Source: Mytilus californianus (lineage: Eukaryota). Taken from it: DNA of 64,000 bases. Shown here piece after piece: positions 7,962 through 26,433 of this stretch. Under the pieces are notes generated by a model. The model had not been told where the DNA came from and did not search any database. It was given only the letters and a program-made list of their open reading frames with translations. Position 1 is the stretch's first letter. The number at the start of each line of letters is the position of its first letter. The DNA is taken from the NCBI RefSeq assembly GCF_021869535.1, contig NW_026262745.1, forward strand, positions 59,210,001 through 59,274,000, given 5' to 3'. The position numbers and the translations under genes are program-made.

Positions 7962-7967
7962 TATATT
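7962..7967. other. Target-site duplication TATATT (left copy)
   Basis: TATATT immediately precedes AGTAGTATG; identical hexamer at 26428-26433. Confidence 0.97.
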
Positions 7968-8479
7968 AGTAGTATGAAATGGGGTCAGTCCCCCACAATT
8001 CCCCCACAGGAAGCCACGTCACAGCTAATCCTCTTAACTATGACGTAGTATCCGGTCTATAATCTCTTAATCCTCTTAACTGCTACTTAACATCCGGGTT
8101 ATAATCCTCTTAACTGAAGTGGATTAATCTCTTAATCCTCTTAACTGCTACTTAACATCCTGGTTATAATCCTCTTAACTGAAGTGGATTAATCTCTTAA
8201 TCTTCTTAACTTGTACTTAACATCCTGGTTATAATCCTCTTAACTGAAGTAGATTAATCTTGTAATCCTCTTAACTTGTACTTAACATCCTGGTTATAAT
8301 CCTCTTAACTGAAGTAGATTAATCTTGTAATCCTCTTAACTGCTACTTAACATCCTGGTTAAAATCCGGTGGTGGAAAATTAACGGAAGTGTTTTTAATC
8401 CCCCTACCCTCCTACGTATGATCTTGTAAACGTGGTATACACGTTGACCTATCCACGTTTACATCCTGAAGTATAATCT
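7968..8479 (+). repeat. Left terminal inverted repeat, 512 bp
   Basis: Line-by-line comparison with the reverse complement of 25916-26427 showed no mismatch. Confidence 0.97.
8058..8362 (+). repeat. 65-bp tandem array (~4.5 units) inside the TIR; mirrored at 26033-26337
   Basis: CATCC anchor recurs at 8091, 8156, 8221, 8286, 8351; each unit has two TAATCCTCTTAACT-like subrepeats. Confidence 0.95.
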
Positions 8480-8567: not shown

Positions 8568-11500
8568 ATGGAAAATTATAACCATCACATGATTGACCAA
8601 CTGGTAAAAGTTATTCCACAAGATGTGTTACAGAAGTTACAACAGCTGTCAGCGCAGGACTTTAATGCAGTCTTACATTCAGTTAAACAACATAATCCAA
8701 CAGAAAAACAACTTGATAAAACTCCTACAGGAAAAGATGACAATGTAACAGATAAAGATAATGTATCAAATTTTAAGTGCCGAACATGCGGTAAGAAGTA
8801 TGCAAGAAAAGATCATTTAATTCGACACCAACACAACCATTCGAATATAAATTATGAATGTGAACATTGTGGTTTCACCACGAAAAGGAAAGATGTTTTA
8901 TCTACACATATGCAGGGAAAACATAATGTAAAGAAAAGAGCACAGAAGGAAGACAATGTACAACCCCCACGTAAACGTCAGAGGACAGAAGATGTTGACC
9001 AACCTCTCGAGGAACGAGTACGCAATGCAAGAGAGAAAAGATCGTTAACAACAACAGCTCTGAACGATGGTGTGGAAAATATTCAATTACAACCCAGCAA
9101 CAATGAAGAAAGATATGACTTGATGTTATTTTTCAAAGAAAAACAAGTGGATATTGTGCAAATATTAGAGGACAGGCTACTTAGAAATAATATAAAGTTT
9201 TATTTGAGTGTACATGTTAGAATGATTAAATATTCACCAGATGGAAAATACGACGAAGCTGAGCCGCATTTCAATAGTAAAGTGTGTACCATTTTACAAT
9301 CTGGTGCTAGTGAAATACCTCACGAGTTGAATAAAGGATTTCAAAAAGTATTCATTTCTTTCGAAGAATTCATCAAGAATGGGAGTGGATGGCAACTTGA
9401 AGAGGTTTTACAGCTCGATCTGTGCGTCACAAAGTACAAACCGTTAAAAGGAGGTAGTTATTTGGAACTACCAACATCACTTAAAAGATCGAACTGTATA
9501 CTCAACATTCAGAACTTGGACAACAAATGTTTTTTATGGACTGTTCTTTCAAGTATGCATAACTTTCAACGAAATCCAGAAAATGTAGAGAATTATGTTC
9601 CATTTGTTAACTCGGTTAACATGACTGGTATCGAGTATCCAACTCCGTTATCTCAAATATCACAATTCGAAAAACAGAATAACACTATCTCAGTTAACAT
9701 TTTTGGATACGAAGAAGGAGAAATCTACCCGTTATACATCACTAAGAAAACCTACTGTCATCATGTGAATATGTTATATTTAAAAGAAAACAACAAAAGT
9801 CATTATGTGTTGATAAACAACTTTAACAGGTTTTTATCGAGAACAAAGAAACATCGTGAAGAACATTTTTTTTGTTATCTTTGTTTGCAAGGATTTACTG
9901 ATAAATGCAAACTAGAGATGCATAAAGCAGACTGTGGAAAATTTGATTTTCAAAAAATTACACTTCCCAAGGAGGGTGAGGTTCTGGAATTCAAAGAATA
10001 TGCAAAAACCGCCCGAATTCCGTTTGTAATCTATGCTGATTTTGAGTGTTTAACACGGAAAGTCGATACTTGTCATCCGAATCCCAACACGTCAAGTACA
10101 ACTACATACCAACAAATGGAACCTTATAGTTTTGGTTATCAAAGAGTGTCAATTGATAAGCGATACGAAAAACCACCCGTTATATACCGTGGACCTGATG
10201 TTGTGGAGAACTTTATCCGTCATCTTCTTGAAGAAGAGAAAGAAATTAAAGACATACTAAGCCGCATCGAGCCAATGATAGTAACTGAGTATGATAAATT
10301 AGACTACAAATATGCCAAAAAATGTAAAAAAACCTTCAGCAGCAAAAATTACAAAGTCAAGGACCATGACCACGTTTCGGGGTCAATTCGTGGAATTTCG
10401 TGTAATAACTGTAATTTACAGATCAAAATACCGAAATTTATACCTATTGTTATTCATAATTTGAAAGGATTTGATGCAAATCTCATCATGAGTAAAATAG
10501 GAAAGTTTAAGGAACAAGACATCACTGTTATTCCACACAACAAAGAAAAATATATGTCATTTTCTATAGGAAATCTCCGTTTTATTGATTCTTTGCAATT
10601 TTTAAACAGTTCACTGGCAACTTTAACAAAAAACCTAGCTGACGAAGGAAAAAAACATTTTAAATACTTATCTAAAAGTTTTCCGGATCCAGATGTATTT
10701 TCTCTATTGCTACGAAAAGGAGTATTCCCCTATGATTATGTTGATACCGAGCAGAAATTGGAAAAACCTTGTTTACCATCCAAAGAAGATTTTTTTAACA
10801 AATTAGGAGACACTCACATATCTGATGAAGATTATCAATTTGCGCAAACAGTGTGGGACAAACTGAAAGTAAAAACATTAGGGGAATACTCCGATGTGTA
10901 TCTTAAAATGGATGTTGCTCTTTTGACGGATGTTTTTGAAAAATTTAGATACATTTCTTTGCACGACTATGATTTGGATCCGTGTCATTATTTCACCACC
11001 CCCGGATTTAGTTGGAGTGCCATGTTGAAGAAAACTGGAATTGTACTCGATTTAATCAGCGATATAGATATGATGTTGTTTATAGAGAAGGGAATAAGAG
11101 GTGGTGTATCTAGTATTTTTCATAGATATGCTAAAGCAAACAATCCATACTTATTCGATACGTATGAACCAACTGAATCTACTTCCTATTTATCTTATTT
11201 AGACGCAAACAATTTATATGGTTGGAGCATGTCTCAATGTCTTCCGTATGGTCACTTCAACTGGCTTACCGAGGAGGAGAAAATAAAATTAGATATCACA
11301 AAATTAAAAGTTGACGGTTCAGACGGATACATTTTCGAAGTTGACCTTGAATATCCATCGTCACTTCATTCTTCTCATTCCGATTTTCCTTTAGCTCCAG
11401 AAAGAAAACATATTCAAGTAGAACATTTATCTCCATATTCAAAGGAATTATTGCAATATTTAACTGGAAAGCAATGTTTGACAAAGATAGAAAAACTCGT

Positions 11501-12068
11501 TCCTAACCTATACGATAAGGAAAAATACATAGTGCATTATAGAAACTTACAACTATACGTAGAGTTAGGAATGAAGATCAAAAAGATACACAGAGTACTC
11601 AAGTTTAAACAAAGTCCCTGGTTGAAGAAGTACATAGACTTTAACACAGAAAAAAGGAAAAATGCAAAGAATGAATTTGAGAAATGTTTATATAAGCTGT
11701 TGAATAATTCAATTTTTGGTCGGACCCTCCTCAATACACGCAAGCATAAAGATGTGAAACTTTGTCACACGGAAGAGAAACTTAATAAAGAAACAGCTAA
11801 ACCATCCTACGCATCTTGCAAAATATTTAACGAAAATTTGGTAGCAGTGGAGAAAAAACGTGTGAATGTTTTAATGAAACAACCAATATACGTAGGTTTT
11901 TGCATTTTAGACTTATCCAAGTTTTTGATGTATGATTTTCATTATAACCATATGAAATCTCTGTATGGTGATAAAATTCGTGTGTGTTTTTCCGATACTG
12001 ATAGCTTTTTATATCACGTTGAAACGGAAGATGTGTATGAAGATATGCATCATTATCAAGATATTTAA
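8568..12068 (+). CDS. polB: Protein-primed family B DNA polymerase with N-terminal C2H2 zinc fingers and an endonuclease VII-like insert; ends at a premature TAA
   Basis: ExoI FVIYADFEC, ExoII IHNLKGFD, motif A YLDANNLYG, motif B KLLNNSIFG, motif C SDTDS; two C2H2 fingers at 8772-8924; DHDHVSGSIRGISCNNCN at ~10362-10415. Confidence 0.96.
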   Translation: MENYNHHMIDQLVKVIPQDVLQKLQQLSAQDFNAVLHSVKQHNPTEKQLDKTPTGKDDNVTDKDNVSNFKCRTCGKKYARKDHLIRHQHNHSNINYECEHCGFTTKRKDVLSTHMQGKHNVKKRAQKEDNVQPPRKRQRTEDVDQPLEERVRNAREKRSLTTTALNDGVENIQLQPSNNEERYDLMLFFKEKQVDIVQILEDRLLRNNIKFYLSVHVRMIKYSPDGKYDEAEPHFNSKVCTILQSGASEIPHELNKGFQKVFISFEEFIKNGSGWQLEEVLQLDLCVTKYKPLKGGSYLELPTSLKRSNCILNIQNLDNKCFLWTVLSSMHNFQRNPENVENYVPFVNSVNMTGIEYPTPLSQISQFEKQNNTISVNIFGYEEGEIYPLYITKKTYCHHVNMLYLKENNKSHYVLINNFNRFLSRTKKHREEHFFCYLCLQGFTDKCKLEMHKADCGKFDFQKITLPKEGEVLEFKEYAKTARIPFVIYADFECLTRKVDTCHPNPNTSSTTTYQQMEPYSFGYQRVSIDKRYEKPPVIYRGPDVVENFIRHLLEEEKEIKDILSRIEPMIVTEYDKLDYKYAKKCKKTFSSKNYKVKDHDHVSGSIRGISCNNCNLQIKIPKFIPIVIHNLKGFDANLIMSKIGKFKEQDITVIPHNKEKYMSFSIGNLRFIDSLQFLNSSLATLTKNLADEGKKHFKYLSKSFPDPDVFSLLLRKGVFPYDYVDTEQKLEKPCLPSKEDFFNKLGDTHISDEDYQFAQTVWDKLKVKTLGEYSDVYLKMDVALLTDVFEKFRYISLHDYDLDPCHYFTTPGFSWSAMLKKTGIVLDLISDIDMMLFIEKGIRGGVSSIFHRYAKANNPYLFDTYEPTESTSYLSYLDANNLYGWSMSQCLPYGHFNWLTEEEKIKLDITKLKVDGSDGYIFEVDLEYPSSLHSSHSDFPLAPERKHIQVEHLSPYSKELLQYLTGKQCLTKIEKLVPNLYDKEKYIVHYRNLQLYVELGMKIKKIHRVLKFKQSPWLKKYIDFNTEKRKNAKNEFEKCLYKLLNNSIFGRTLLNTRKHKDVKLCHTEEKLNKETAKPSYASCKIFNENLVAVEKKRVNVLMKQPIYVGFCILDLSKFLMYDFHYNHMKSLYGDKIRVCFSDTDSFLYHVETEDVYEDMHHYQDI

Positions 12069-12460: not shown

Positions 12461-12980
12461 ACAAATGACATTTTTTTTATCATGTAAAACGTTCAAGTCT
12501 TATATGTTATTTTCTATTTGTTTTAACTATTTCGTATTTTTATTATTATTTTTGTTCATTTTTTTTTCTATATCAAAATTTGGGGTGATTAAAATAATAA
12601 TTAAACATTTAGCGAGGGAAACTATTATTTGTTCATTTGAGGGTTATTGTGTATATGTATTTTATTTTTTGTTTGTTTGTTTTCTTTTTGTCAAATGTGT
12701 ATTAATAACTAGAGCAAAGTGGGAATTTTTTTTTTTGGATATCAAAAATTTGTGGTGATTTAAATACGATTGTTACATATAGTGAAGGAGAATGTAGATG
12801 CATCATATTTTTATTATAATTTATTGTATATTGTATTCGATAGTATTTATTCAGTTTATTATTTTGTGTATGACAAAATTTGTTTGTGGGTAATTTAGTT
12901 ACTTTTTTCTTGTAATTTACTTTTACATCTATGTTTTATTTATTCCTGTTTTTTTTTTTTTTCGCATCCTATCTGATTGA

Positions 12981-13028
12981 AATAAAACATAAAATATCAA
13001 TGAATCCAGTTGTTTGTTTTCGTTTATT
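12981..13028. terminator. Convergent polyadenylation signals between polB and the major capsid gene
   Basis: AATAAA on + at 12981-12986 and TTTATT (AATAAA on -) at 13023-13028 in a T-rich spacer. Confidence 0.5.
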
Positions 13029-13124
13029 TGAATATATTGTAGTAAAACACACATTATAAAAAAAGATAGATATACACAATAAACAAACAGTCATAGTCAT
13101 GATTTTACAATTTACATGGAAATG

Positions 13125-14438
13125 TTAGTGTTCAATCTTTATTTGTCGATTCTCGGTTATTTCAAAGTATCCATAGTTTTCAGCTAAAATCAGTAAGGCA
13201 GCTGTTTCTGGTAATGGAGTACCGAACTGACATTCCAATCGTATTTTCCCCTGCTTCAGTAGTGAAAGATATTTGGTATCCGAAAAGAATGGTTCTAAGT
13301 TGAAGCATAGAAGCGTATATCCATTGTTGAATTCAGCCCTTGTTATTTCATTCCCCGTATCCAACATCCACTTTCCTCCTGTTTCAAACATTTTTACATA
13401 AGGAGAAACGTTCGATGCACCGCTATTCTCGTTGAAATCAAGTTTGAGTGGTATACCATCAACTGGTATTCCGTCACAAAACAGAGTCACCTGTTTTAAA
13501 TCATAATTCTTAAAGTTAAATGGGTTTTTTGTATATGCTCCAGACATAGCATTTGAAGAAACCAATCCAAGCACAATACTTTTCGGTCTCGCATCTTGGA
13601 AAACATTTTCTACGATTAACGAAGTACTTCCTTGCATTATTGTAAAATTTTTCATCATGGTTTTTGTGAAAGGATACTTAGCATTTGTTGTCTTTAAAGC
13701 TTCTGAATGAGCGACAATTATAGCTGGGTTAGGTCTGATCTTACAAAGCTTTATCACGACATCTTCCAAAGAAATATGATAGTTAGTTTCAATTTCTCCA
13801 GACATCAAACAAAAACTTGGATCGTTGCGGTATAATTTTAGTTTAAGGGATAACATATTTAGCAGGTATCTATCCATCTCAAAGATATCAGAAAAAACTG
13901 GTCCCTCCATTTCTAATGTTTTCGAATTAGAAATAAATTTTCTGCGTTCATACAGTCCAGTGTTAGTAGATATTTCATCCATGTGACCATACCTGTCTTT
14001 TAAGTACAGACTAGAAGATAATTGTGTGCTCTTTGCGTCTTGGCCATACTGCAGTAATGTTTTCATCATACATTTATACGGGTAATACGTATTACTAGAC
14101 GTTACCATTTGTCCTTGTATATAAACATCCAATTGCGACCAAAGCGATTGTAAAAATAAGTTCACAGGTCCTACCGTATCGCCATCTTGTAAATCTTCAC
14201 CATTTGCTTTTTTCACTTTTAATTTCACGTATAGTTTCGATCTTTTAAGATCTATATAATCCATACCATTGTTTGCACATAGATCGAATTCTATAGGATT
14301 GTAAGCTGTTATTTGACTAACAGGTCTGCATTCCTCGTATGTTATACTTTCAACACCGACTTGATATGGAGGTATCTCAAAAATCTGTAACTCTGACGGT
14401 TGTGCTTCAATAAAATTCTCTTTAGTTAACAAAGACAT
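13125..14438 (-). CDS. Maverick major capsid protein (double jelly-roll), 437 aa
   Basis: N-terminal SELQIF..PP.Q..ESITYEECRP..PIEF..DYIDL..LYVKLKV and later RPKSIVLGLV, NPFNF motifs match Polinton MCP as I recall them; size and synteny fit. Confidence 0.9.
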   Translation of the reverse strand: MSLLTKENFIEAQPSELQIFEIPPYQVGVESITYEECRPVSQITAYNPIEFDLCANNGMDYIDLKRSKLYVKLKVKKANGEDLQDGDTVGPVNLFLQSLWSQLDVYIQGQMVTSSNTYYPYKCMMKTLLQYGQDAKSTQLSSSLYLKDRYGHMDEISTNTGLYERRKFISNSKTLEMEGPVFSDIFEMDRYLLNMLSLKLKLYRNDPSFCLMSGEIETNYHISLEDVVIKLCKIRPNPAIIVAHSEALKTTNAKYPFTKTMMKNFTIMQGSTSLIVENVFQDARPKSIVLGLVSSNAMSGAYTKNPFNFKNYDLKQVTLFCDGIPVDGIPLKLDFNENSGASNVSPYVKMFETGGKWMLDTGNEITRAEFNNGYTLLCFNLEPFFSDTKYLSLLKQGKIRLECQFGTPLPETAALLILAENYGYFEITENRQIKIEH

Positions 14439-14839
14439 TATGTTGAAAATATATCCCTTTTATGTTTTTTAACAGTTTTATCTTTTTTCGATTTTTTCGT
14501 CTTCTTTTCACCTCCTCTGCTTTGTGGCGAATGATGATTTTTTCGCTTTCTTTTCTTTTTATTTATACTCTCACCGTCATTTTTTATCTCTTCTTTTGCT
14601 TGATTAACAATTTGTTCACTAGGCGACACTAACCGTACCTCAAAGTTTTTTTCTTTTTCAACACGAATTGGATAAGATTTATTCGAAATTGGAATCATAA
14701 ACGATCCCGATTGCGATCCTTTATTATGTCCATTTTTCATATGAGCTACGTAAGCGTTCGATTGACCAGAAATTACATTCTGATAATATCTAGACCATAG
14801 ATCAACATTAGGAATGTACATTTTATCAATGTTCGACAT
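14438..14839 (-). CDS. Basic Lys/Arg-tailed protein, 133 aa (candidate virion core/DNA-condensing protein)
   Basis: Intact ORF between minor and major capsid genes; C-terminal KKKRKRK..KKTKKSKKDKTVKKHKR; stop overlaps the MCP ATG. Function is inference. Confidence 0.7.
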   Translation of the reverse strand: MSNIDKMYIPNVDLWSRYYQNVISGQSNAYVAHMKNGHNKGSQSGSFMIPISNKSYPIRVEKEKNFEVRLVSPSEQIVNQAKEEIKNDGESINKKKRKRKNHHSPQSRGGEKKTKKSKKDKTVKKHKRDIFST

Positions 14840-14846
14840 ATCTACG

Positions 14847-15272
14847 CTAAAATACGCTTGGTATAAATTGTAGTGTAAAAGACAAATTATTTTTCAAAAA
14901 TGAAGCGTTTTCTCCGTGTTCATCTTTTATAAGAAATTCTAAGACTTGAATTTCGTTTTTCTTTACCGGTAAATAAATTGGAGACGAAAATAAATAATTC
15001 CATGTATTCATATCCGTGGGAAATATTCTTCGTAAAAGTGAATATTGTATATGGGGAAAAACATTCACTCCACTACATACATCACAAAACAAGTATAATT
15101 GATGATTGTTCTTTTTTGTAACTTTTTGATTAGAGTAAAAATCTAATATTCCTAGTTTCCATTCACCTTGTAATTGTAAAACTTCATTTAAACACACTTT
15201 GAACTTGAACGGTGAATTATTAGGGTAATATGCATCAGATTGATCACTTCGAATGAAAATTATATGTTCCAT
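14847..15272 (-). CDS. Minor capsid (penton-like single jelly-roll) protein, 141 aa
   Basis: S..YYPNNSPFKFKV.L...L.L.GEWKLGI and LYLFCDV..LLRRIF..Y.PV..EFLIKDEHG..F..FTLQF motifs of Polinton minor capsid. Confidence 0.85.
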   Translation of the reverse strand: MEHIIFIRSDQSDAYYPNNSPFKFKVCLNEVLQLQGEWKLGILDFYSNQKVTKKNNHQLYLFCDVCSGVNVFPHIQYSLLRRIFPTDMNTWNYLFSSPIYLPVKKNEIQVLEFLIKDEHGENASFLKNNLSFTLQFIPSVF

Positions 15273-16408
15273 TATGATAAAGATTGAATCTGTTCTTCTG
15301 GTATGTATTCGTCATACGAAGGAGGCCACCCTTGAAAACGAACTAAGTATTCAGTTTTTCCTCGTCTTTTTCGCTTCTTTAAAATTTTTTCAATTATCCA
15401 AAGACTATTTTCGTCTTTGTCTACTCTTTGAAGTTCACTATCATAAAAGGTTCCCCTTATGAATTCGTCTCCATTTATATTTGAAACCCTGTAAAGATCA
15501 ATATTTTGTTGTCTGAATCTTTGTACTACTTTGAATATCTCTTCCGTCCATCTTTGACTATACGATCGATCAAAAATATGAGCAATATTTGAGAGTCGAA
15601 CTAAAGAACCGATTTTGTATTTGTATTGTTTTTTTCTCTTTTTCTTTTTGTTTGTTTGTACTTTTATTTCTTTCATTTTTTTCTCTGTTTCACTTAAATA
15701 CATTTTCCCCCAGATATCACTCTCGTTGTCTGAATTAACGTCTTTAGGTGCAATGTTTTGTAAACTTCTATGAGGAGTATCATTATAGCTTTTTGCAAAA
15801 TTTTGCAAGTTGTTAATATATCTATGTGTTCTGTTCTTTGTGAAAAGGCGAAACATTTTATTCTTTATAGTTTGTAAGACTCTTTCAGCATAATTTGCGT
15901 GAAGTTCATTTTGAGCCGAAAAATGGCGGACACCATTCCTTTTAAATAATGACTGTGTCTTTTTGGCTAGAAATTCTTGTCCCTTATCTGTTCGAATTTT
16001 TTCCGGTTTTACCTCACTAAAAATCTTTTTAAATGCAGAGGTGACTTCATCTCCCGTTTTATTTTTCAATGGTTGTAACCAAAGATAGCGTGAGAAACAG
16101 TCAACAACAACTAACACGTATTTGTAATTTTCATTTTCTTGTGAAAATTGTTTAAGATCCATTAAATCGGCGTCCCATAAATTATTCAACCCCGTGGTAT
16201 ACACTCTTATTCTTTTAAAAGAACGACGAGGTGTTTTTTGTAAACTGTAATTATCTTGTGAATTCAACCACCGTTTAATTTGATGTCTACCAACTTTATT
16301 CCCATCTGCATTTACGATATGATACAGTTTTTCGGTAGAAGCATATGAAGCTGGTCCACCAACATCATAATAGTATTTACTTAGGAGAGTATCTAGTTCC
16401 TCATTCAT
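15272..16408 (-). CDS. int: Retroviral-type (rve) integrase with C-terminal chromodomain, 378 aa from the ATG at 16408
   Basis: WDADLMD, VVVDCFSRYLW, IRTDKGQEF, AERVLQTIK, YNDTPHRSL; chromodomain WIIEKILKKR..EYLVRFQGWP..DEYIPEE. Confidence 0.96.
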   Translation of the reverse strand: MNEELDTLLSKYYYDVGGPASYASTEKLYHIVNADGNKVGRHQIKRWLNSQDNYSLQKTPRRSFKRIRVYTTGLNNLWDADLMDLKQFSQENENYKYVLVVVDCFSRYLWLQPLKNKTGDEVTSAFKKIFSEVKPEKIRTDKGQEFLAKKTQSLFKRNGVRHFSAQNELHANYAERVLQTIKNKMFRLFTKNRTHRYINNLQNFAKSYNDTPHRSLQNIAPKDVNSDNESDIWGKMYLSETEKKMKEIKVQTNKKKKRKKQYKYKIGSLVRLSNIAHIFDRSYSQRWTEEIFKVVQRFRQQNIDLYRVSNINGDEFIRGTFYDSELQRVDKDENSLWIIEKILKKRKRRGKTEYLVRFQGWPPSYDEYIPEEQIQSLS

Positions 16409-16864
16409 ACTTAACTCAATTTGAACTGAATGTATATCTCGCAAATTAGTTTTAAGTAAAGTTTCACATATGAATCGGATTAGAGGTAAAAAAGATGGGG
16501 GGGGGGGGGGGGGGGGGGGTGGAAAAAAACAAAAAAAAAGTGTTTCAATAACTGAAATTAGTTTGTGTTTTGATTTAAGATATAAAAAAAGTTAAGAAAA
16601 AAAAAAAAACTTTTCATTAAGGAATGTAAATATTTGCATCTTTTTCATTTCTATTCGATTCTTATATAAATCTCTACCTAAAAACAATACCACTACATCA
16701 ATAAATAAGAAATACAAAAAAAAAAATATGTTTACATAATTTATTATAAAATCTATCACAAAAATAATGATGATGTCCTTTAAATATTGTCTGTCATTCA
16801 ATTCCATCTTTTATTCATTTCATTCCATCTTTTAATCATTCCGATCCATCTTTTATTCGAATGC

Positions 16865-19800
16865 TTAATGGTCTATTTCCATATTCTGTAAAACACAACA
16901 AAATTATTTAGTCAAAAATCATCACTTTACCAAGAATCAACACTATAGTATTATATTTAAATCACGTGACATTTTACATGACATAATCGGAAAAAGAAAG
17001 AAAAAAATGGTCGCCATGTTGCTTTTGAGTTTGTTATTTTGCTTTCAAAGTGTTGTAAATGTAGGAGCTGTACATATATCATCTTGCTACAGAGTTGAAG
17101 ATTTTATAGATTGTTCGAGGGAAACAGAAGAGAGCTTTCAGGGAGAGGTAGCAGATGACGTTTTAAACATTCGCTTCAACCATATACAGAGCAAACATCA
17201 AATTGAAGATGTTAAATTTACGAAGCATGTTATCATAATGTTGGAAGAATCTTTGAATTTGTGTGATGATATTAATCATAAACTGATGATGGTAGACGGG
17301 AAAATGTGTACAGTAAGTCTACATTCATTTTATTTGAATGGTAAAAATATAACACAATAAAAAAATTTGCATACATGAATATTCATGAAAGACTTCAAGT
17401 TATATTTCAATCACGTGATAAGTAAACATTTCTAGAAATAATATGAATCTCCTCGGTTGTCGAGTATAGTAGATCAGTGAATGAAATATCTAAATTACAA
17501 CATGGTTAAACTTCAACCGTTATTAATAACGATGACTGTCTTCATAACGGAGTTTATATACTTTATTCCTCATCTAATAAGAAGTCTATTCATCTTCCCA
17601 GTTATTTCTCTTTCTCTTATAAGAGTATACATGCATATTCTACTTCTAAACTCATAACTTACATCATTTTCAACATCGGAAGTGATGTCTATCATTTTTC
17701 TCTTCTTGTTCTGTAGAATAAAAAGTATCATCATTAGCTATAATGTATTAAACATTTATATATATAAAAAAAAAACAACCTTGGAAGTAAGGTATTAAAA
17801 ACATCTTTGTTTTCATTTACTCGTTTTTTTTATTTGCTTTACAATTATTTGTTTATTGGATGAATCTGGTTTTTTTCTCCTTTCTTTTTATTACTTATTA
17901 CCAAAAATCAAGATGTACTTACTAATGATGGTTTCGCGTCTACATTTTGACTCCCTCTGGGCTGACTCATGTTGGTTAAATCAAGCTGTTGAATAGAAAT
18001 TTATAAAAAAAACTTTTAAACATTTACACATGATAAAAAAAAAACAATAAAGCATGCAATGGATATTTTATTATTTTTTTTTTTTTTTACTTTAACCCTT
18101 TCTTAATAATATTGTTAACATTGTATAAATTGTATTACTTATAATGAGTTAAATCTATACATACACAGTAAGGATCTTTTTCGTCATCTTTTGTTAAGTC
18201 TATCATCTACAAAATAAACATGTATAGCTTTAAAATAAGAATATACAATCTTTTATGATGAAAATTAACTTTACACATATACTTTTAAATTGACATATTA
18301 ATTTTCTGAAAGCTCATATATACATGTATATATATTATTAATGTTATAAGCAATATAAAATTTATAAATAATACATATGGAGTTTAAAACCGATTTGCAA
18401 CTTATAATGAGTTAAATCTATACATACACAGTAAGGATCTTTTTCTACATCTTTTGTTAAGTCTATCATCTACAAAATAAACATGTATAGCTTTAAAAAA
18501 AGAATATACAATCTTTTATGATGAAAATTAACTTTACACATATACTTTAAATTGACATATTAATTTTCTGAAAGCTGATATTTACAAGCAATACTAAATT
18601 TATAATTAATTCATATGGAGTTGAAAACAGATTTGCTAATCTATATATAGTTTTCATTCATTAAAATGAATGAATATGCATACTTACTATGATATCTTGG
18701 GGGTTGCTTCTCTCCTGCATCTGTAAAATAAAAGAATTTATATATACTTTTTTTTAATAGATTACTGAATCAACTAATTCTTTCGCTGAGTCAAGTTGGA
18801 GTATTGACGATGAACTAATAACAGATACAGGTAATTTTCTTTTTTTTTTCTTTGTCTTTTTATTGAAATGATAACTAATTTCCTCCTCAGTGAGAATGAA
18901 TACTTTAATAAATCAGAAACTTGTATAAAGGAATCTTTTCTGTTTTTTCCTGTAACTGTAATCTTAATGTAAAATACTTTTATTTTCATGTAATAAGAAA
19001 TCTCAAAGAACCCTATCCTATCATTTTAAAGATATTATATTTTTTTTTTTTTTGTATTTATTTACAGTGACATTTTCAAACAGTAAAGATGAGGGAGAAA
19101 TTACTACATTAGAAATTCTTGGATGTAAGTATTTTTAGTTTTGAAATTATAAATATAAATTTCTATTAATCACGTTGATAAAAAGTGTAATGTGTACACA
19201 TCATATGTATAACAATTGTATTTATATTATTTGAAATATAAAAAATGTGATATCGTGTAATGAGATTGAGAAAACTCTTCGTTAATCGCTTTGGGTGTAA
19301 GAAAAGAAGAAAAATAGATTTAAGTGAACTACTTGTGAAAATCATGTATTTTCATGCAAAAAAAAAAATTACTTTTCAGATGTGGAAAATACAGAGGGAA
19401 ACGATAATGAAATTTATGTTATATTATTAGGTGTACTCTCATTTGTTTGTATATTTATAATTTTTGTTTTTATGATATTGTATAGGAAACATATATGTTT
19501 TAAATGTTATAGTCATAATATTCTTCCTTCACACGTAGACACAGTTTCACTTAGAAGAATGTCTAGCATTACTTCATTGACAAGTGATAATGAAATTGTG
19601 TTTTCGTGTGAAATGGAACGAAAATGTAAGTAAGATTTTTTTTTATATTAATTAGGTTAGCTTTATTCACAGTTAAACTTCTTTTTATTTCAGATATTTT
19701 GTCATCCTTTACAGTAATTATATTAGGACTTATCCCTATGAGGCAGAGTGTCAAAGACTTGCTAATACATTCTATACAAAAGATTTTTACAATGGCTATT

Positions 19801-20180
19801 AATAGAAATTTGAACTATAATACATTTATCAATCTTTTATATCAGTTACTTAATTATATTTTTCATTATTTTATTCAGAAAAGAAAACCTTTACGTAGGA
19901 GCAACAGACGTCGTGTTGCTCCAAATAGATTAATGTATAATCAGTTTTGAGTTTTGAAATATTATAGTGTACACACTCAATTCTAGTTTCATGGATAAAT
20001 TTTTACTTTCCTACTATTTCAAAAGTTATTAAAGTATTCATTGGAATTAAACCAAAAACAAAAATCTATTCTTTTTAAACTGTGAAAAAAACTTACCTTA
20101 ATATCTTGAACCAATGACGACAGCTGTAACAGACATTTCTCAATCATAACTATTTTGATGAGGTTCTTATTTGAATTCAT
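16865..20180 (-). CDS. Predicted 5-exon 82-aa protein antisense to the membrane gene; exons 20180-20097, 18720-18688, 17985-17923, 17710-17663, 16885-16865
   Basis: All four donors GTAAGT, all acceptors CAG after pyrimidine tracts, all exons multiples of 3 (84, 33, 63, 48, 21 nt), no internal stop, AATAAA just after the TAA. Confidence 0.72.
17007..19950 (+). CDS. Predicted 6-exon type I membrane protein (~256 aa) inside the Maverick; exons 17007-17312, 18761-18830, 19068-19124, 19380-19625, 19694-19713, 19879-19950
   Basis: All introns GT-AG with pyrimidine tracts; phases 0,1,1,1,0 give a continuous ORF: signal peptide, 4-Cys ectodomain, S/T/acidic stalk, TM IYVILLGVLSFVCIFIIFVFMILY followed by RK. 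Last two exons less certain (alternative stop at 19633). Confidence 0.78.
17525..17632 (-). pseudogene. Degenerate paralogue of the 25528-25836 ORF
   Basis: MYTLIREREITGK vs MYTLLRERELTGK (11/13 identical); after a frame change MRNKVYKLRYED vs IRNRVDKLHHEE. Confidence 0.65.
18137..18640. repeat. 263-bp tandem duplication (~1.9 copies), intronic for both spliced genes
   Basis: ACTTATAATGAGTTAAATCTATACATACACAGTAAGG at 18137 and 18400. Confidence 0.9.
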
Positions 20181-20659
20181 TTTTTTCTTCTTTTTTTTTC
20201 TTTTACAGTTTGCAACTTATTAACATATGATTATCAAACAAGTGTTAAGGTGTATTTATTAGTACTTCACATCCTGGATTAAGTGAATGGGAGGGGTATA
20301 AGGAATTATCTATACAAAGGGTGGAATAATGGAGATGTTTTTTTTTTTAATCCTCATTTTTTTTCATATATCAATTATCTAATCTCTTTGTATTTGAAAG
20401 AAACAATACAAGTTGTTATTTGTAGGTGGGGTCTGATTTTATTTACTCAATCTTTCATTTGCTGTTGTGAAAAAACACCTCATAGTTTATTATGATAAAA
20501 GATTAAATTATTGTTTGAAAGAAAGGTGATTGATTGATTAGAAATACCCCCTCCCTCATTTGTTTACACTTTTAGTCAATTAATTTTTGAGAATTAAATT
20601 GTCTGAAGACTATTAACTTGGAAAGTTTTTCATACATCTATATAATTAACAAGTTTGTT

Positions 20660-21125
20660 GTATAGTGCTATAAAAAAAAAAAGATATATAATATCACTAA
20701 TTCAATGATAATGAACTCCTCACCCCTTTATTAAAACATAAGGTTGTCTCCCTTTAAGGTTGTGTGCTTTTTTCTATTTAATCTTGAAATAGTAATATGT
20801 TACTCAGGGAAAACAAGTTTTTTTATATAGTTATGTAATATACATGTTGTTTTTTTTTTCTTTTCTGTATAGTGTTATAAACAAGATATATGATATCTAT
20901 ATTGCAATGATAATTAACTACTCAATCATTTTATTAACACATAAAGTTGTCTCCCTTTAAGGTTGTGTGCTTTTTTCTATTTAAACTTGCAATAGTAATA
21001 TGTTACTCAGGGAAAACATTTTTTTATATAGTTATGTAATATACATGTTTTTTTTTTCTTTCTTTTTTGTATAGTGCTATAAAAGAAAGATATATGATGT
21101 CAATAATGTATCAATAATTAACTTC
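20660..21125. repeat. ~200-bp tandem duplication (~2.3 copies) in the Maverick AT-rich spacer
   Basis: GTTGTCTCCCTTTAAGGTTGTGTGCTTTTTTCTATTTAA at ~20744 and ~20946. Confidence 0.88.
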
Positions 21126-21975
21126 TCAAACTGATAAATTTTTTTTTTGTGTGTGTGTGCGTCTAATTTACTGTTTTAAAACTAAATTATAAATGTGTGT
21201 AAAAAAAAAAAAAATGATAGAGTTTATCTTCTTTTTTACTTTTTATAATACACAATGTTGGAAAGATATATCTTGTTTGTATATGTAAAGTTATGTAAAT
21301 ATGTTACACCCAACCAGTAAAGTTTATGTTTATTGATAGTGTTGCATTTTAAAAATGTTCTTATGTGATATGTTATTACAATCATGGTGCACTTTAAAAA
21401 CATATTTGTCTTTAAAGAATTTTTTTGTATATATGTTACTTTTAATATAAAAACATTGTTATATGCTATGTAAAACCCAAAATAATAGTACTAATGTATT
21501 TTTAAAAATTAAAAAATATTTAATTGATGAAATTTATTATAATTTAGACTGGAAAAAATAAAACTTTTATTTTCACTTTGCAAATTCATAAAGTATACCA
21601 CCATACAGTATTTTTTATATTAATAAAATAAGTTGATAACAATTATACTTTTGTTTATCTCATTGTTTTTGTTAGTAGTTAATCTTCACTGCAGAGAAAC
21701 ACATACTTTCAGGATATTGTGAGCTCTTAATTGGTGGTGATTTCAATGTTATAAAATTTTTACTTTTCCTTTATTTGCTATTGCTAAGAATTAGTCTATG
21801 CTTTAAGGAAGTTGTCTGGAAAAGGGATTTCATTGATTGACATCATCACATCATTAAACAAACAAAAAATAACCATCTTAGTCTGATAGTTAAAATGAAT
21901 AATCAACACAAACCATTATTCTATATTTATTAGCATACAATAAAAAAAAAAAAAAAAAAAACATTAGAAAGGATA

Positions 21976-22578
21976 TTACAATTTGAATCTTTTCCATTTA
22001 AGTTTAGGTTTGTCATCAAGCAGTCTTGAAAGTTCTCTTTTTACACAAAGTTTATTGTTATTTGTCTGTTTTTTCTTTTTTCTAACGTGTTCACTTTCAG
22101 CTAATAGTTCATTTTTCAGTGTTGTAGTTGTATCCGATTGAAACAGTTGTCTTCTCATTCTATTTGAAATAAATCCCATAGGTATGTGGATCGTTTTAAG
22201 AAAATTATAAAAATGTATATATCCATTAGGTGGATGTTTGCATCCATATGGAATGACAACATCCCGCAATAAGTCAACAATATGAGTGTTTGGTATAGTT
22301 TCGTTGTTAATATGAATTTCTCCTCGTTTGTTCCAACTAATTAATGGTTGAGTCTGAAGAAAGTTCAATAGTTGTTTCCCCTTCTCTCTATATTTCACTG
22401 GTATGGTCAGCTCGATTAAAGTGTTCAATTCATGGTCAGAATTTTCATTTTTGGTTATTAATTCCTCCTTTGGTGAAAATTCTTCCTTAGAACAAGTTTG
22501 TTTGCTGCTTTCATTGTTTTCTGTTTGTACTATACTTTCATATCTATGTTTTGGAAGAAGAATCATTTCTCTTGTCAT
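21976..22578 (-). CDS. Maverick-associated hypothetical protein (~200 aa)
   Basis: Intact ORF with ISWNKRGEI..NETIPNTHIVDLL motif that I recall from Maverick ORFs; first ATG at 22578; overlaps the upstream ORF. Confidence 0.75.
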   Translation of the reverse strand: MTREMILLPKHRYESIVQTENNESSKQTCSKEEFSPKEELITKNENSDHELNTLIELTIPVKYREKGKQLLNFLQTQPLISWNKRGEIHINNETIPNTHIVDLLRDVVIPYGCKHPPNGYIHFYNFLKTIHIPMGFISNRMRRQLFQSDTTTTLKNELLAESEHVRKKKKQTNNNKLCVKRELSRLLDDKPKLKWKRFKL

Positions 22579-22888
22579 TTTTAATTGTTTCAAGTATTGG
22601 TTTTACAATAATAGGAATAATGTTATGATATTTCAGAAACAATTTTTTTCTCTGAATACGTGATGTCTCTCTGTGTGTTATTTTCCGAATGATACTTTTA
22701 TATTTCATAAGTTTCTTTTTAACTGATCGGCTAAGATGAAATACCCCCCATAACACATTTAAAAAACACTCAACTAAAAGTTGAAATTGTTTGTCGTTCA
22801 TAGTCTTCAACAATGCAATTTTCTGTTCTTCGTCATATGTAATTAAAAGCGATAAAAAATGTACATGGGCTAAAACTTGTTTACTCAT
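22544..22888 (-). CDS. Short helical basic Maverick protein (114 aa; possibly the PM-type core ORF)
   Basis: LVECFLNVLWGVFHLS..KKKL.KYK.IIRKI motif; ATGA overlap with the ATPase stop. The PM label is tentative. Confidence 0.7.
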   Translation of the reverse strand: MSKQVLAHVHFLSLLITYDEEQKIALLKTMNDKQFQLLVECFLNVLWGVFHLSRSVKKKLMKYKSIIRKITHRETSRIQRKKLFLKYHNIIPIIVKPILETIKNDKRNDSSSKT

Positions 22889-23550
22889 TTTGGAACAAAA
22901 ATTACTGGATCTTCTCCTTTGAAAATTTTTGTTCTCAATAAATATGTTTTATCTGTATGCGTTGACAAATCGATAATCAAATAACCAAACCTACTACAAA
23001 CTGCCTTTTCATAAGCTGACATGAAATAGTTTAATTGACCTGGGAGAATCTGTCTTCCTAAAACTGATAACTGGTGTTTGTCACGTTGGTTTTTTAGACA
23101 TATTATGTATGTTGCGTTTAACGAAATAGTACGTATGCATTTTCCAGGAGGGAAAAGATTTTGCATAAGAAACAAAACTGTTATATTACAATGATGAGAT
23201 TTGACGGTAAAAAGATTTAATACATCACTAGAGTTTGAAGCTTGACATAATAAATCATCAAGACAAAGAATCATATGTTCTTTATTTTCTGACCATTTAT
23301 CAATTTCCTCACTGGATGGTAAACCTTCGTGAAAAGTTATGTTTCTAACTTTTTTTTCCATCTCTGAAAACAAATTCTGATATGCAGAGTAACAATAAAT
23401 GGTTTTCTTTGGTGTTTTGGTAAATAGGTATTCAGATTGAGCCAGGATTTTATATGTAAGCATGGTTTTTCCTGACTGAGTAGGTCCAACTATTTGTATA
23501 CAACACGGTGATTGAAACGGCAAAAGCACTTTCTCCGTGTCTTCACACAT
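22885..23550 (-). CDS. FtsK/HerA (A32-like) genome-packaging ATPase, 221 aa
   Basis: Walker A GPTQSGKT, Walker B ILCLDD, FTVKSHH.NITV.FLMQNLF, RTISLNATY, YLIIDL. Confidence 0.95.
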   Translation of the reverse strand: MCEDTEKVLLPFQSPCCIQIVGPTQSGKTMLTYKILAQSEYLFTKTPKKTIYCYSAYQNLFSEMEKKVRNITFHEGLPSSEEIDKWSENKEHMILCLDDLLCQASNSSDVLNLFTVKSHHCNITVLFLMQNLFPPGKCIRTISLNATYIICLKNQRDKHQLSVLGRQILPGQLNYFMSAYEKAVCSRFGYLIIDLSTHTDKTYLLRTKIFKGEDPVIFVPK

Positions 23551-23852
23551 TTTTGTTTGTTTGTTGTCTAAACCTTAATTGACTTATGGATTGTGATTTA
23601 TTTTTCAAGGTATTTGTTTGTTTTATATACTGTTATTTCTAACTTGTTTTAGTTTTTTTTATTTGAGAAAGAAAATACACCACCAGAAAGAAAAAAAAAG
23701 AATCAAAATACATCACCAGAAAAAAAAGAATCAAAATACTACAACTGAAAAAAAAAAAGAACCAAGTACACAATAAAGTGCAACAAATGAAGTAAAATAC
23801 GGATGCAACCTAATGATTCCGGAATAAAAAGGCGGATATTAACGAACGATTC

Positions 23853-23935
23853 CGGAAATGATCGGAAATGACTTTACATTCGGAAATAAACGAATGTTTC
23901 CGACTACTACCGGAAATAAATATACATACGGAAAT
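23853..23935. promoter_or_regulatory. Cluster of five CGGAAAT motifs upstream of the ATPase gene block
   Basis: CGGAAAT at 23853, 23863, 23881, 23911, 23929 in otherwise CpG-poor DNA; the regulatory role is inferred. Confidence 0.5.
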
Positions 23936-24107
23936 AAACGAATGATTACGAATACAATCGAAATGATATAAACGAACATGAAGTCATTTCTAATCTTTAC
24001 CAGAAATATAATTTTTTCATTAAAAAATAAATACACAACGAAAAAATTTCATATCAGTATACTAATTTATTCAATGAAATATACATGTATTTATATATAA
24101 TACAATC

Positions 24108-24512
24108 TTATTGTGTGAAACGTTCTTCAAGTTTTACTTTCCTTTCCATTAAATTATAAACAGTCTCTTTCATTTTTTGTGATCGAAGTGTATCAAGGAA
24201 CAACACATGAAGAATGAAAAAGTTTAAAACGACACTATTTTCCAAGTTCAATGTTCTCACATTTTCTCTGTACTTTCCTAGTATGTGACTGTATTTAAAT
24301 TCACAATACGCCTGTTCAAAATGTTTTTCAAGTTTATCCAGTTCACTATCCATCAAACAATCGTGTCTATGTTGTGATCCATGTTCAACTTTGCATCCCT
24401 GGCAAAACTTCTTTGATAATTGTTGCACCATTTCTTCTAATAATTCAGCAAAAGAAAACAATAATATAGTTGAAAGTAGCCTTTTTCCCATACCGTCTTT
24501 AATGTCCACCAT
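24108..24512 (-). CDS. Accessory protein with CxxC..HxSQxxHxC putative zinc-binding motif, 134 aa
   Basis: FCQGCKVEHGSQHRHDCL; intact ORF 7 nt downstream of the previous stop. Confidence 0.75.
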   Translation of the reverse strand: MVDIKDGMGKRLLSTILLFSFAELLEEMVQQLSKKFCQGCKVEHGSQHRHDCLMDSELDKLEKHFEQAYCEFKYSHILGKYRENVRTLNLENSVVLNFFILHVLFLDTLRSQKMKETVYNLMERKVKLEERFTQ

Positions 24513-24519
24513 TATATTA

Positions 24520-24780
24520 TCAGTGTTCGTCTATAAATGAATAAAGAAATAAGATGCTTTCCTTTAGATTACACAGTTTTGTCCAATTTTCTTTACTGAT
24601 CAGAATCTTTTTCCCTTTTATAACAAGCTGTAATCGGGTATGTTTTCCTCTTTTCTTCACCACCACTTTTATCGTTTCATCAATTAAACATTCAATCTGT
24701 TTCTTGAATAAATCAGTATGCAAATGTTCAAAGTCACAACCGTACACCTCCTTAGATAAATCAACCTGTGCCTGTGCCAT
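24520..24780 (-). CDS. Small accessory protein, 86 aa (weakly PC4-like)
   Basis: Intact ORF; KKILISKENWTKLCNLKESI resembles the PC4 C-terminal strand-helix pattern; similarity is weak. Confidence 0.55.
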   Translation of the reverse strand: MAQAQVDLSKEVYGCDFEHLHTDLFKKQIECLIDETIKVVVKKRGKHTRLQLVIKGKKILISKENWTKLCNLKESILFLYSFIDEH

Positions 24781-25836: not shown

Positions 25837-25915
25837 ATTGTTTGTTCTTATGGAAATACTGTTGATGTATGATATATAGTAAACGTTTTTCTTAGTTTAT
25901 AAACTGATTGCATTC

Positions 25916-26427
25916 AGATTATACTTCAGGATGTAAACGTGGATAGGTCAACGTGTATACCACGTTTACAAGATCATACGTAGGAGGGTAGGGGGATTAA
26001 AAACACTTCCGTTAATTTTCCACCACCGGATTTTAACCAGGATGTTAAGTAGCAGTTAAGAGGATTACAAGATTAATCTACTTCAGTTAAGAGGATTATA
26101 ACCAGGATGTTAAGTACAAGTTAAGAGGATTACAAGATTAATCTACTTCAGTTAAGAGGATTATAACCAGGATGTTAAGTACAAGTTAAGAAGATTAAGA
26201 GATTAATCCACTTCAGTTAAGAGGATTATAACCAGGATGTTAAGTAGCAGTTAAGAGGATTAAGAGATTAATCCACTTCAGTTAAGAGGATTATAACCCG
26301 GATGTTAAGTAGCAGTTAAGAGGATTAAGAGATTATAGACCGGATACTACGTCATAGTTAAGAGGATTAGCTGTGACGTGGCTTCCTGTGGGGGAATTGT
26401 GGGGGACTGACCCCATTTCATACTACT
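25916..26427 (-). repeat. Right terminal inverted repeat, 512 bp
   Basis: Reverse complement of 7968-8479. Confidence 0.97.
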
Positions 26428-26433
26428 TATATT
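26428..26433. other. Target-site duplication TATATT (right copy)
   Basis: TATATT immediately follows CATACTACT; 6-bp TSDs are typical of Maverick rve integrases. Confidence 0.97.

What the first reader, a model, noticed from the sequence alone, without database searches (positions are those of the whole stretch)
16865..20180. Two interdigitated, oppositely oriented spliced genes hidden in the middle of the Maverick
Seen: a 6-exon + gene and a 5-exon - gene share 3.3 kb with no exon overlap. Sense exon 1 lies in antisense intron 4, antisense exons 2-4 lie in sense intron 1, and sense exons 2-6 lie in antisense intron 1. Every junction is GT-AG and both joined frames are open; all four antisense donors are GTAAGT. 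Known: Maverick core genes are normally single-exon ORFs, so ORF-finder annotation would miss both genes. Inference: a virus-encoded sense/antisense cassette, possibly mutually exclusive through transcriptional interference, acting as a latency/activation or host-interaction switch. This is the best candidate here for an undescribed system.
Basis: partly seen in the sequence, partly recalled or inferred. Interest (0 to 1): 0.9.

Follow-up and report, generated by a model that had tools for sequence, protein, structure and literature searches.

The report
Interleaved spliced genes in mussel Maverick
Inside a young virus-like transposon (Maverick) of a mussel genome lies a real five-exon gene for a small membrane protein, and woven between its exons on the opposite strand is a probable second, tiny spliced gene; relatives confirm the first, while the second rests on splice signals alone.

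Summary
The observation largely holds. The region lies in an 18.46-kb element (7968-26427) with 512/512-identical inverted ends, a 6-bp duplication (TATATT), an integrase and a polymerase-like ORF.

The + strand gene is real. Exon 1 encodes a four-cysteine domain with 19 database relatives, and every named one is from Mytilus. Spliced Mytilus models leave exon 1 at the same place.

The - strand five-exon path (82 codons, all phase 0, four GTAAGT donors) is exactly as described and is non-random:
- All 7 GTAAGT in the region are model donors.
- 3 of 3 internal exons are symmetric and open, against 0 of 20 GTAAGT sites elsewhere.
- It carries a cluster of SUMO-interaction-like (I/L)D(L/I)T motifs.

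It has no homologue and no expression evidence.

Intron-bearing cargo beside the integrase is already known from nematode Mavericks. The latency-switch idea is untested.

The parts
7962..7967 (.). left target-site duplication TATATT
   Evidence: identical hexamer at 26428-26433
7968..8479 (.). left terminal inverted repeat (512 nt)
   Evidence: 512/512 complementary to 25916-26427
8568..12068 (+). polymerase-like ORF (1166 aa) with N-terminal C2H2 fingers and an endonuclease VII-like stretch; family-B polymerase motif order read in the translation
   Evidence: no polymerase family or PDB hit
15272..16444 (-). rve integrase with C-terminal chromodomain
   Evidence: rve 2.9e-14, Chromo 4.6e-08
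16794..16858 (-). 21-bp x3 tandem repeat carrying three AATAAA on the minus strand just after the antisense stop
16865..16885 (-). antisense exon 5 (6 codons + stop)
17007..17312 (+). sense exon 1: signal peptide plus four-cysteine ectodomain (102 aa), donor GTAAGT
17663..17710 (-). antisense exon 4 (16 codons; basic patch, IDIT motif, acidic run), donor GTAAGT
17923..17985 (-). antisense exon 3 (21 codons; begins with LDLT), donor GTAAGT
18137..18636 (-). 263-bp tandem duplication inside sense intron 1 / antisense intron 2; each unit encodes two IDLT motifs on the minus strand and resembles antisense exon 4
18688..18720 (-). antisense exon 2 (11 codons), donor GTAAGT
18761..18830 (+). sense exon 2 (Ser/Thr/acidic stalk)
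   Evidence: boundary shared with P0004
19068..19124 (+). sense exon 3 (stalk); signals and frame only
   Evidence: no homologue support
19380..19629 (+). sense exon 4: membrane span plus conserved cytoplasmic tail; donor GTAAGA at 19630 (tandem GTAAGT at 19626)
19879..19933 (+). sense exon 5: C-terminal 17 residues plus stop, 16/17 identical to the end of P0004
20097..20180 (-). antisense exon 1 (ATG + 27 codons), donor GTAAGT
   Evidence: no homologue
21976..22593 (-). ORF of 205 aa, unknown function, 38% identical to the N-terminal part of M. coruscus model P0002
22885..23550 (-). P-loop ATPase-like ORF (Walker A and B read in the translation)
25916..26427 (.). right terminal inverted repeat
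26428..26433 (.). right target-site duplication TATATT

Best explanation
The region is the accessory (cargo-type) cassette of a recently inserted mussel Maverick. It sits between the integrase module and the ATPase module.

Shown:
- The + strand carries a five-exon gene for a 245-aa type I membrane protein.
- Its parts are a signal peptide, an ~80-aa four-cysteine beta-rich ectodomain, a Ser/Thr/acidic stalk, one membrane span and a ~60-aa cytoplasmic tail.
- Among close relatives the tail is the most conserved part.
- The protein belongs to a small family whose named members are all from Mytilus. Members recur next to Maverick integrase-like and ORF205-like genes.

Probable (about 0.5):
- The - strand is also spliced, through four consensus donors, into an 82-codon ORF.
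- Its exons lie in the introns of the + gene, and the + gene's exons lie in its introns.
- It has its own ATG and its own stop, followed by three AATAAA.

Inferred (low confidence, about 0.2 each):
- The membrane protein is a cell-surface or endomembrane accessory protein whose conserved tail directs trafficking or signalling. This would be analogous in role to the small early membrane proteins of DNA viruses.
- The antisense product is a small nuclear protein. It would dock on the SUMO machinery or on SUMO-modified proteins through its (I/L)D(L/I)T motifs with flanking acidic and serine residues, plus a basic patch.

The two transcription units would overlap over about 3 kb, so they must influence each other. 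The direction and purpose of that influence are unknown.
For: Element:
- 512/512-identical TIRs and a TATATT duplication on both sides.
- An rve integrase with chromodomain.
- Polymerase motifs in the 1166-aa ORF and Walker A/B motifs in ORF221.
- G+C of 0.235-0.238 across 18-22 kb, against 0.30-0.35 around it.

Sense gene:
- phmmer of exon 1 against 1.84 billion representatives gave 19 hits, and the named ones are all Mytilus.
- The family alignment shows four conserved Cys, and conservation stops at the donor. ORF-type relatives read on as Val-Ser at that point, which is what GTAAGT encodes.
- P0004 leaves exon 1 at the same residue, and its exon 2 aligns with the window's.
- The tail is about 93% identical and the last exon is 16/17 identical, against 55% for exon 1 overall.
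- The ORF-type copies P0020 and P0022 are 85-87% identical across exon 4. In P0022 the similarity begins at the acceptor's pyrimidine tract.
- Hydropathy peaks at the N-terminus and in exon 4.
- The AlphaFold model of exon 1 has pLDDT 83.5, and about 90 across the domain.
- Models P0018 and P0002 join exon-1-like sequence to integrase-like (58% identity) and ORF205-like genes.

Antisense gene:
- The path is open and entirely in phase 0.
- GTAAGT is enriched and every copy is used as a donor.
- The model acceptors rank at or near the top.
- Exons 2 and 3 are 0.43-0.45 G+C islands.
- 3 of 3 internal exons are symmetric and open, against 0 of 20 elsewhere.
- 6 of the window's 13 six-frame [ILV]D[LI]T hits lie on the minus strand within 17692-18466.
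- (I/V)DLT is a published SIM core (PMC4907222).
- No strong in-frame acceptor leads into the integrase ORF.
- AATAAA occurs three times just after the stop.

Precedent: an intron-bearing cargo region next to the integrase in nematode Mavericks.
Against: - The antisense exons have no homologue in two searches. Those searches only see proteins of 29-94 aa.
- No expression data are available.
- AATAAA/ATTAAA is common in this A+T-rich DNA, at 2.9 per kb per strand.
- Sense exon 3 and the exon 2-3-4 junctions rest on signals and frame only. P0004 skips exon 3 and the membrane span, and P0009 shares only the architecture.
- The ectodomain has no Pfam family and no significant fold match in PDB or BFVD, so its function is guesswork.
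- In P0002 and P0018 the exon-1-like sequence lies on the same strand as its neighbours, unlike here. The arrangement therefore varies, or those gene models are chimeric.
- Capsid and protease genes were not identified.
Confidence: 0.55

Rival explanations
1. Only the sense gene is real. The minus-strand path is a by-product: relic or cryptic splice-like sites in long A+T-rich introns that are not used, or are used only as noise.
For: No homologue for the antisense exon-1 or exon-4 ORFs. The exons are tiny (11-28 codons). The region was chosen post hoc. The tandem duplication shows that exon-4-like sequence can be copied without keeping a donor.
Against: The minus strand has four exact GTAAGT against about 1 expected. 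Each is preceded by the best or second-best acceptor. All exon lengths are multiples of three and open in frame 0, against 0 of 20 such cases elsewhere. Exons 2 and 3 are G+C islands not explained by the sense gene. The motifs cluster on one strand.
Confidence: 0.2
2. The minus strand gives a spliced, polyadenylated but non-coding antisense RNA. It modulates the membrane-protein gene through transcriptional interference, double-stranded RNA or small RNAs.
For: The two units overlap completely. Splice signals are strong. There is no protein homologue.
Against: A non-coding RNA needs neither an initiating ATG followed by four phase-0 exons that stay open, nor a cluster of one peptide motif in the spliced frame.
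Confidence: 0.15
3. One reading: the pair is a mutually exclusive sense/antisense switch that sets latency versus activity of the element or governs host interaction.
For: Only the geometry supports it: two convergent, fully overlapping units with separate starts and ends. The exact 10-mer AATCACGTGA occurs twice in 64 kb, both times here, which could be shared regulatory sites.
Against: No expression evidence of any kind. Overlap alone does not show exclusivity. Relatives appear to carry the membrane-protein gene in the other orientation relative to its neighbours, which would not preserve a fixed switch architecture.
Confidence: 0.1
4. The minus-strand exons are leader exons of a long minus-strand transcription unit. 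They are spliced across the inverted membrane-protein gene onto the integrase module downstream.
For: ORF205, the integrase and three tightly packed ORFs all lie on the minus strand. Relatives seem to have the membrane-protein gene on that same strand.
Against: The last antisense exon stops after 6 codons and is followed by three AATAAA. No strong acceptor upstream of the integrase ORF is in its frame. A leader would not be expected to start with an ATG and stay open through four exons.
Confidence: 0.05

Closest known systems
Cargo region of nematode Mavericks (wasp / krma genes; bioRxiv 10.1101/2022.07.12.499685, read)
   Same: A 2-5 kb stretch next to the integrase stands out by its G+C content. 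It carries intron-bearing genes, while the core genes are intronless. Here a 5.5-kb stretch next to the integrase has distinct G+C and holds a spliced gene.
   Different: Here the stretch lies between the integrase and the other minus-strand genes, not between a TIR and the integrase. Its G+C is lower, not higher. The cargo is a small membrane protein of a family whose named members are all from Mytilus, not a protease or kinase. A second exon set is interleaved on the opposite strand. Host origin and horizontal exchange were not tested.
Vertebrate Mavericks (PMC8097293)
   Same: TIRs, 6-bp target duplication, and integrase and polymerase modules arranged in two blocks.
   Different: Intact vertebrate elements are described there as having eight intronless ORFs. 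This element has at least one five-exon gene.
Small early type I membrane proteins of large DNA viruses, such as the adenovirus E3 region proteins (from my own knowledge; analogy of role only)
   Same: Short signal-peptide and membrane-span proteins with a conserved cytoplasmic tail, made from spliced transcripts of an accessory region.
   Different: No sequence or fold similarity to any viral protein was found. This is a resemblance of architecture, not membership.
SUMO-interaction-motif proteins: (I/V)DLT core as in PIAS1 (PMC4907222); EVIDLT Ubc9-binding motif of adenovirus E1A CR2 (PMC3685863)
   Same: The antisense exons and the duplicated unit encode LDLT, IDIT and IDLT. In exon 4 an acidic and serine run follows the motif and a basic patch precedes it.
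   Different: This is a motif-level likeness only. There is no homology and no binding evidence, and the ORF itself is unproven.

Membership tests
Maverick / Polinton | long terminal inverted repeats | tested here: met
   512/512 nt, 7968-8479 against 25916-26427
Maverick / Polinton | 6-bp target-site duplication | tested here: met
   TATATT on both sides; feature as stated in PMC8097293
Maverick / Polinton | retrovirus-like (rve) integrase | tested here: met
   PF00665 2.9e-14 plus chromodomain
Maverick / Polinton | [quoted passage not shown] | tested here: inconclusive
   No polymerase family or PDB hit. Exonuclease and palm motif order, including DTDS, can be read in the translation.
Maverick / Polinton | capsid proteins, packaging ATPase, cysteine protease | tested here: inconclusive
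   Walker A/B motifs in ORF221 and a weak P-loop match. No capsid or protease match. The single-sequence model of ORF437 was unusable (pLDDT 32).
Maverick cargo region (nematode type) | adjacent to the integrase, with G+C unlike the rest of the element | tested here: met
   The region starts about 560 nt from the integrase start. G+C is 0.235-0.238 against 0.30-0.35.
Maverick cargo region (nematode type) | genes with introns | tested here: met
   The exon 1 / intron 1 boundary is shared with spliced Mytilus models and with read-through ORFs
Maverick cargo region (nematode type) | [quoted passage not shown] | not tested
   This needs the genomic context of family members, which I did not fetch
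Leucine-rich-repeat ectodomains (considered for exon 1) | match to an LRR family model or LRR solenoid fold | tested here: not met
   No Pfam hit. No fold match with E <= 0.001 in PDB or BFVD, only scattered LRR proteins among insignificant hits. The plant RPS2-type LRR hits are a 32-residue local similarity multiplied by repeats.
SUMO-interaction-motif proteins (considered for the antisense ORF) | hydrophobic core of the (I/V)DLT type with flanking acidic or serine residues | tested here: met
   Six hits on the minus strand between 17692 and 18466, against 0.34 expected per strand; definition from PMC4907222
SUMO-interaction-motif proteins (considered for the antisense ORF) | binding to SUMO or Ubc9 | not testable with these tools
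   -

The most novel reading that the evidence does not exclude
A Maverick carries a true exon-interleaved gene pair on opposite strands. One gene encodes a membrane protein with a fold unlike any solved or predicted viral structure. The other encodes an 82-aa nuclear protein that uses (I/V)DLT-type motifs, as adenovirus E1A CR2 and PIAS proteins do, to engage the host SUMO machinery. Their complete convergent overlap would make the two products temporally exclusive, giving an early/late or silent/active toggle in an endogenous virus of an animal.
Probability: 0.1. Interest if true: 0.8.

Novelty: new variant of a known kind. Interest (0 to 1): 0.5.

Why it matters
Surveys of Mavericks and other endogenous DNA viruses call ORFs without considering introns (stated, for example, in bioRxiv 10.1101/2025.04.19.649669). 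Intact vertebrate Mavericks are described as intronless (PMC8097293).

This locus shows that a young mussel Maverick carries at least one conserved multi-exon accessory gene, so ORF-based gene counts for bivalve elements are incomplete. Bivalve genomes are reported to hold the highest content of such elements.

If the antisense unit is real, it would be a rare case of two protein-coding genes with mutually interleaved exons. That layout cannot arise by simple nesting and implies that exons were born inside the partner's introns. It would also give a concrete, checkable handle on how such elements are regulated in their hosts.

Tried and rejected
Tried, with no result:
- My first five-exon sense model read 19694-19950 as one last exon. 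It was open but I rejected it, because relatives end in another frame.
- Pfam and PHROGs on the element's ORFs found only the integrase, zinc fingers and an endonuclease VII-like stretch.
- PDB sequence searches with the polymerase-like ORF, ORF437 and ORF221 gave only zinc fingers, nothing, and a weak P-loop match.
- Fold searches with the exon-1 model against PDB and BFVD gave nothing significant.
- I rejected the LRR idea for exon 1 as a membership claim.
- Exons 3 and 4 compared with the RefSeq relative P0009 showed no similarity.
- Homologue searches with the antisense exon-1 and exon-4 ORFs found none.
- A self-comparison found no second copy of the cassette in the window and no inverted repeats flanking it.
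- I looked for an in-frame splice from the antisense exons into the integrase ORF and found none with a strong acceptor.
- A single-sequence structure prediction of ORF437 failed.
- An Rfam and tRNA scan found nothing in the region.

Left out on purpose:
- I did not build, fold or search the joined proteins of either model.

Slips that I report:
- In some searches my scripts strung non-adjacent stretches of the element together in memory, only to compute a G+C fraction (0.225 and 0.320). Nothing but the number was printed or saved. I do not rely on those two numbers and use instead.
- In my working thoughts I recalled a few short motif strings of known proteins and signals from memory as leads. 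The report uses only motif strings printed by tools or by the cited papers.
Full report
**Setting**

The window is A+T-rich, with G+C of 0.30-0.35, and has no N runs. The finding lies inside an element bounded by inverted repeats. The stretches 7968-8479 and 25916-26427 are complementary at 512 of 512 positions, and the hexamer TATATT flanks both ends.

Inside the element I found:
- An rve integrase with chromodomain at 15272-16444 on the minus strand.
- A 1166-aa plus-strand ORF at 8568-12068. It hits only C2H2 fingers and an endonuclease VII-like stretch in family and PDB searches. Its translation nevertheless shows the order of family-B polymerase motifs, ending with DTDS.
- An ORF with Walker A and B motifs at 22885-23550.

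TIRs, a 6-bp duplication, an integrase and a polymerase are the marks of Mavericks (PMC8097293), so I accept that label. Two reservations apply. The polymerase is recognised by motif reading only, and I could not identify capsid or protease genes.

I did not establish whether any core gene is broken. The polymerase-like ORF looks short at its C-terminal end compared with what I expect of such enzymes. I made no count of breaks because I had no comparator.

The identical TIRs point to a young insertion. The named relatives found later are all from Mytilus, so the window is most likely from a mussel. Nothing suggests human sequence.

**The sense gene**

Exon 1 (17007-17312) is an ATG-initiated frame of 102 codons ending at a GTAAGT donor. 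An exhaustive phmmer search with this exon alone found 19 proteins at E <= 0.001.

The informative hits are:
- M. edulis CAG2236763.1 (P0004).
- M. galloprovincialis RefSeq XP_076072711.1 (P0009).
- M. coruscus models, and short ORF-type proteins from ENA and Logan assemblies.

The alignment shows four conserved cysteines and a handful of invariant residues. Conservation stops one to three residues after the last cysteine. At that point the spliced models continue with a stalk-like exon. The ORF-type proteins instead read on as Val-Ser in five of seven cases, which is what GTAAGT encodes in phase 0. The first intron is therefore one that relatives share.

P0004 leaves exon 1 at the same residue as the window, and its next segment aligns with window exon 2. 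Its C-terminal part matches the second half of window exon 4 at about 93%. Its last 17 residues match 19880-19930 at 16 of 17.

That last match fixes the 3' end of the gene. Exon 4 must end at 19629 (donor GTAAGA) and join 19879-19933. With the GTAAGT four bases upstream the split codon is a stop. In P0020 and P0022 the residue there is Tyr rather than Cys, so in those copies only the downstream donor can exist.

P0022 also shows similarity starting at the acceptor's pyrimidine tract of exon 4 and not further upstream. Exon 3 and the junctions around it rest on signals and frame only.

Its last exon, however, is read in a frame that relatives do not conserve.

The supported model has 738 nt and 245 codons. 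Its parts are:
- a hydrophobic N-terminus;
- the four-cysteine domain;
- a Ser/Thr/acidic stalk;
- a strongly hydrophobic span in exon 4 followed by basic residues;
- a tail that is more conserved among close relatives than the ectodomain (55% for exon 1 against about 93-94% for the tail).

I checked frames exon by exon with phases and split codons.

**What the sense protein is**

Exon 1 has no Pfam family. An AlphaFold model built from the 12-sequence alignment is confident (pLDDT 83.5, about 90 over the domain). It has no significant match in the PDB or among predicted viral structures.

Three plant RPS2-type LRR proteins appear in the phmmer list. This is only because a 32-residue local similarity is repeated many times in them. 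I do not file the domain as LRR.

Two M. coruscus gene models join exon-1-like sequence to other element genes:
- P0018 joins it to an integrase 58% identical to the window's.
- P0002 joins it to a relative of ORF205 that is 38% identical, while the exon-1 part itself is 88% identical.

The family therefore recurs next to Maverick genes. In those models it lies on the same strand as its neighbours, whereas in the window it is on the opposite strand to both.

My functional reading is an accessory membrane protein whose conserved tail directs trafficking or signalling. This is an inference from architecture alone.

**The antisense path**

Five independent features argue that it is not chance:
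- GTAAGT occurs four times on the minus strand and three times on the plus strand of the 3.3 kb. Every one is a model donor. The window average is 0.2 per kb per strand.
- With a simple pyrimidine score, the model acceptors of the three internal exons rank 1st, 2nd and 1st among 13-20 AG dinucleotides upstream of each donor.
- With boundaries fixed by those signals, all three internal exons are multiples of three and open in frame 0. Two of them are closed in the other frames. None of the 20 GTAAGT sites elsewhere in the window has such an exon.
- Exons 2 and 3 are G+C islands (0.45 and 0.43) in an intron background of about 0.23-0.24.
- The spliced frame and the adjacent 263-bp tandem duplication encode six [ILV]D[LI]T motifs within 0.8 kb of the minus strand. 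That is 6 of 13 such hits in the whole six-frame translation of the window, against 0.34 expected per strand. The duplicated unit resembles exon 4 at the DNA level but lacks its donor.

The ORF starts at an ATG in the same A-rich context as the sense ATG. It ends six codons into exon 5, followed by three AATAAA inside a 21-bp repeat. Such hexamers are common in this DNA.

No strong acceptor leads in frame into the integrase ORF.

Against the gene: two homologue searches with the ORFs around exons 1 and 4 found nothing, and there is no expression evidence.

(I/V)DLT is a published core of SUMO-interaction motifs (PMC4907222). EVIDLT is the Ubc9-binding motif of adenovirus E1A (PMC3685863). This gives a testable guess for the product, no more.

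**Comparison with what is known**

Intact vertebrate Mavericks are described as intronless. Nematode Mavericks have a 2-5 kb region next to the integrase that stands out by G+C content and holds intron-bearing cargo genes.

The cassette here fits that kind: it lies next to the integrase, has distinct G+C and is spliced. It differs in the cargo, in its position between two gene modules, and in the interleaved opposite-strand exon set.

The interleaving cannot come from one gene inserting into an intron of another. One exon set must have arisen within the other's introns.

**What I did not do**

That comparison is the best sequence-level test of the antisense exons, and it is listed under referred steps.

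I report two kinds of slip:
- Scripts strung non-adjacent stretches of the element together in memory to get a G+C fraction. I do not use those numbers.
- I recalled short motif strings from memory while thinking. None was entered into a tool.

**Verdict**

- The sense gene is real, at about 0.9.
- The antisense spliced ORF is probable, at about 0.5.
- The switch interpretation is untested.
- This is a new variant of the known Maverick cargo region, of moderate interest.

Noticed in passing
window 25450-25495 (-), with ORF 25836-25531 (-): Rfam histone 3' UTR stem-loop hit (35.1 bits, threshold 34). It lies about 35 nt after the stop of a 102-aa minus-strand ORF just inside the right TIR. It is the only such hairpin in the window, and the ORF has no family hit. 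A Maverick gene with a histone-type 3' end would tie its expression to S phase.
   Followed up: partly
window 8568-12068 (+): The polymerase-like ORF carries two C2H2 zinc fingers near its N-terminus (residues 68-123). It also has an endonuclease VII-like stretch (residues 572-619) upstream of the palm motifs. No polymerase family model recognises it.
   Followed up: partly
window 16960-16969 and 17409-17418 (+): The exact 10-mer AATCACGTGA (palindromic CACGTG core) occurs only twice in 64 kb. One copy is 47 nt upstream of the sense ATG, right after an A/T-rich TATA-like run. The other is in sense intron 1.
   Followed up: partly
window 16497-16519 and 16794-16858: A run of 23 G lies between the antisense 3' end and the integrase start. 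A 21-bp x3 tandem repeat puts three AATAAA on the minus strand just after the antisense stop.
   Followed up: no
window 20645-21129: Three copies of a ~203-bp tandem repeat lie in the 1.8 kb without long ORFs, between the antisense start and ORF205.
   Followed up: no
proteins P0002 and P0018 (M. coruscus), compared with window 15272-22593: These gene models join exon-1-like sequence to ORF205-like and integrase-like sequence on one strand. In the window the membrane-protein gene is on the strand opposite to both. The cassette may therefore be inverted between copies, or the models may be chimeric. In P0002 the exon-1 part is 88% identical but the ORF205 part only 38%.
   Followed up: partly
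proteins P0001 (773 aa) and P0003 (438 aa), Mytilus: These gene models run through tandem arrays of five or six exon-1-like units, signal peptide included. The exon appears to have been amplified like a satellite in some mussel genomes.
   Followed up: no
window 17440-17490, 19262-19301, 19719-19774, 20256-20328: These G+C islands (>= 0.40 in 40 nt) in the cassette belong to no exon of either model. They may be alternative exons or regulatory sites.
   Followed up: no
window 19535-19540 (+): The M. edulis model P0004 goes from exon 2 straight into the middle of exon 4, skipping exon 3 and the membrane span. The window has an AG at the matching place that would keep the frame, so an isoform without a membrane anchor is conceivable.
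   Followed up: no
window 29141-31093 (-): An ORF of 650 aa with an nSTAND3 NTPase domain and ankyrin repeats lies outside the element, 2.7 kb beyond the right TIR.
   Followed up: no
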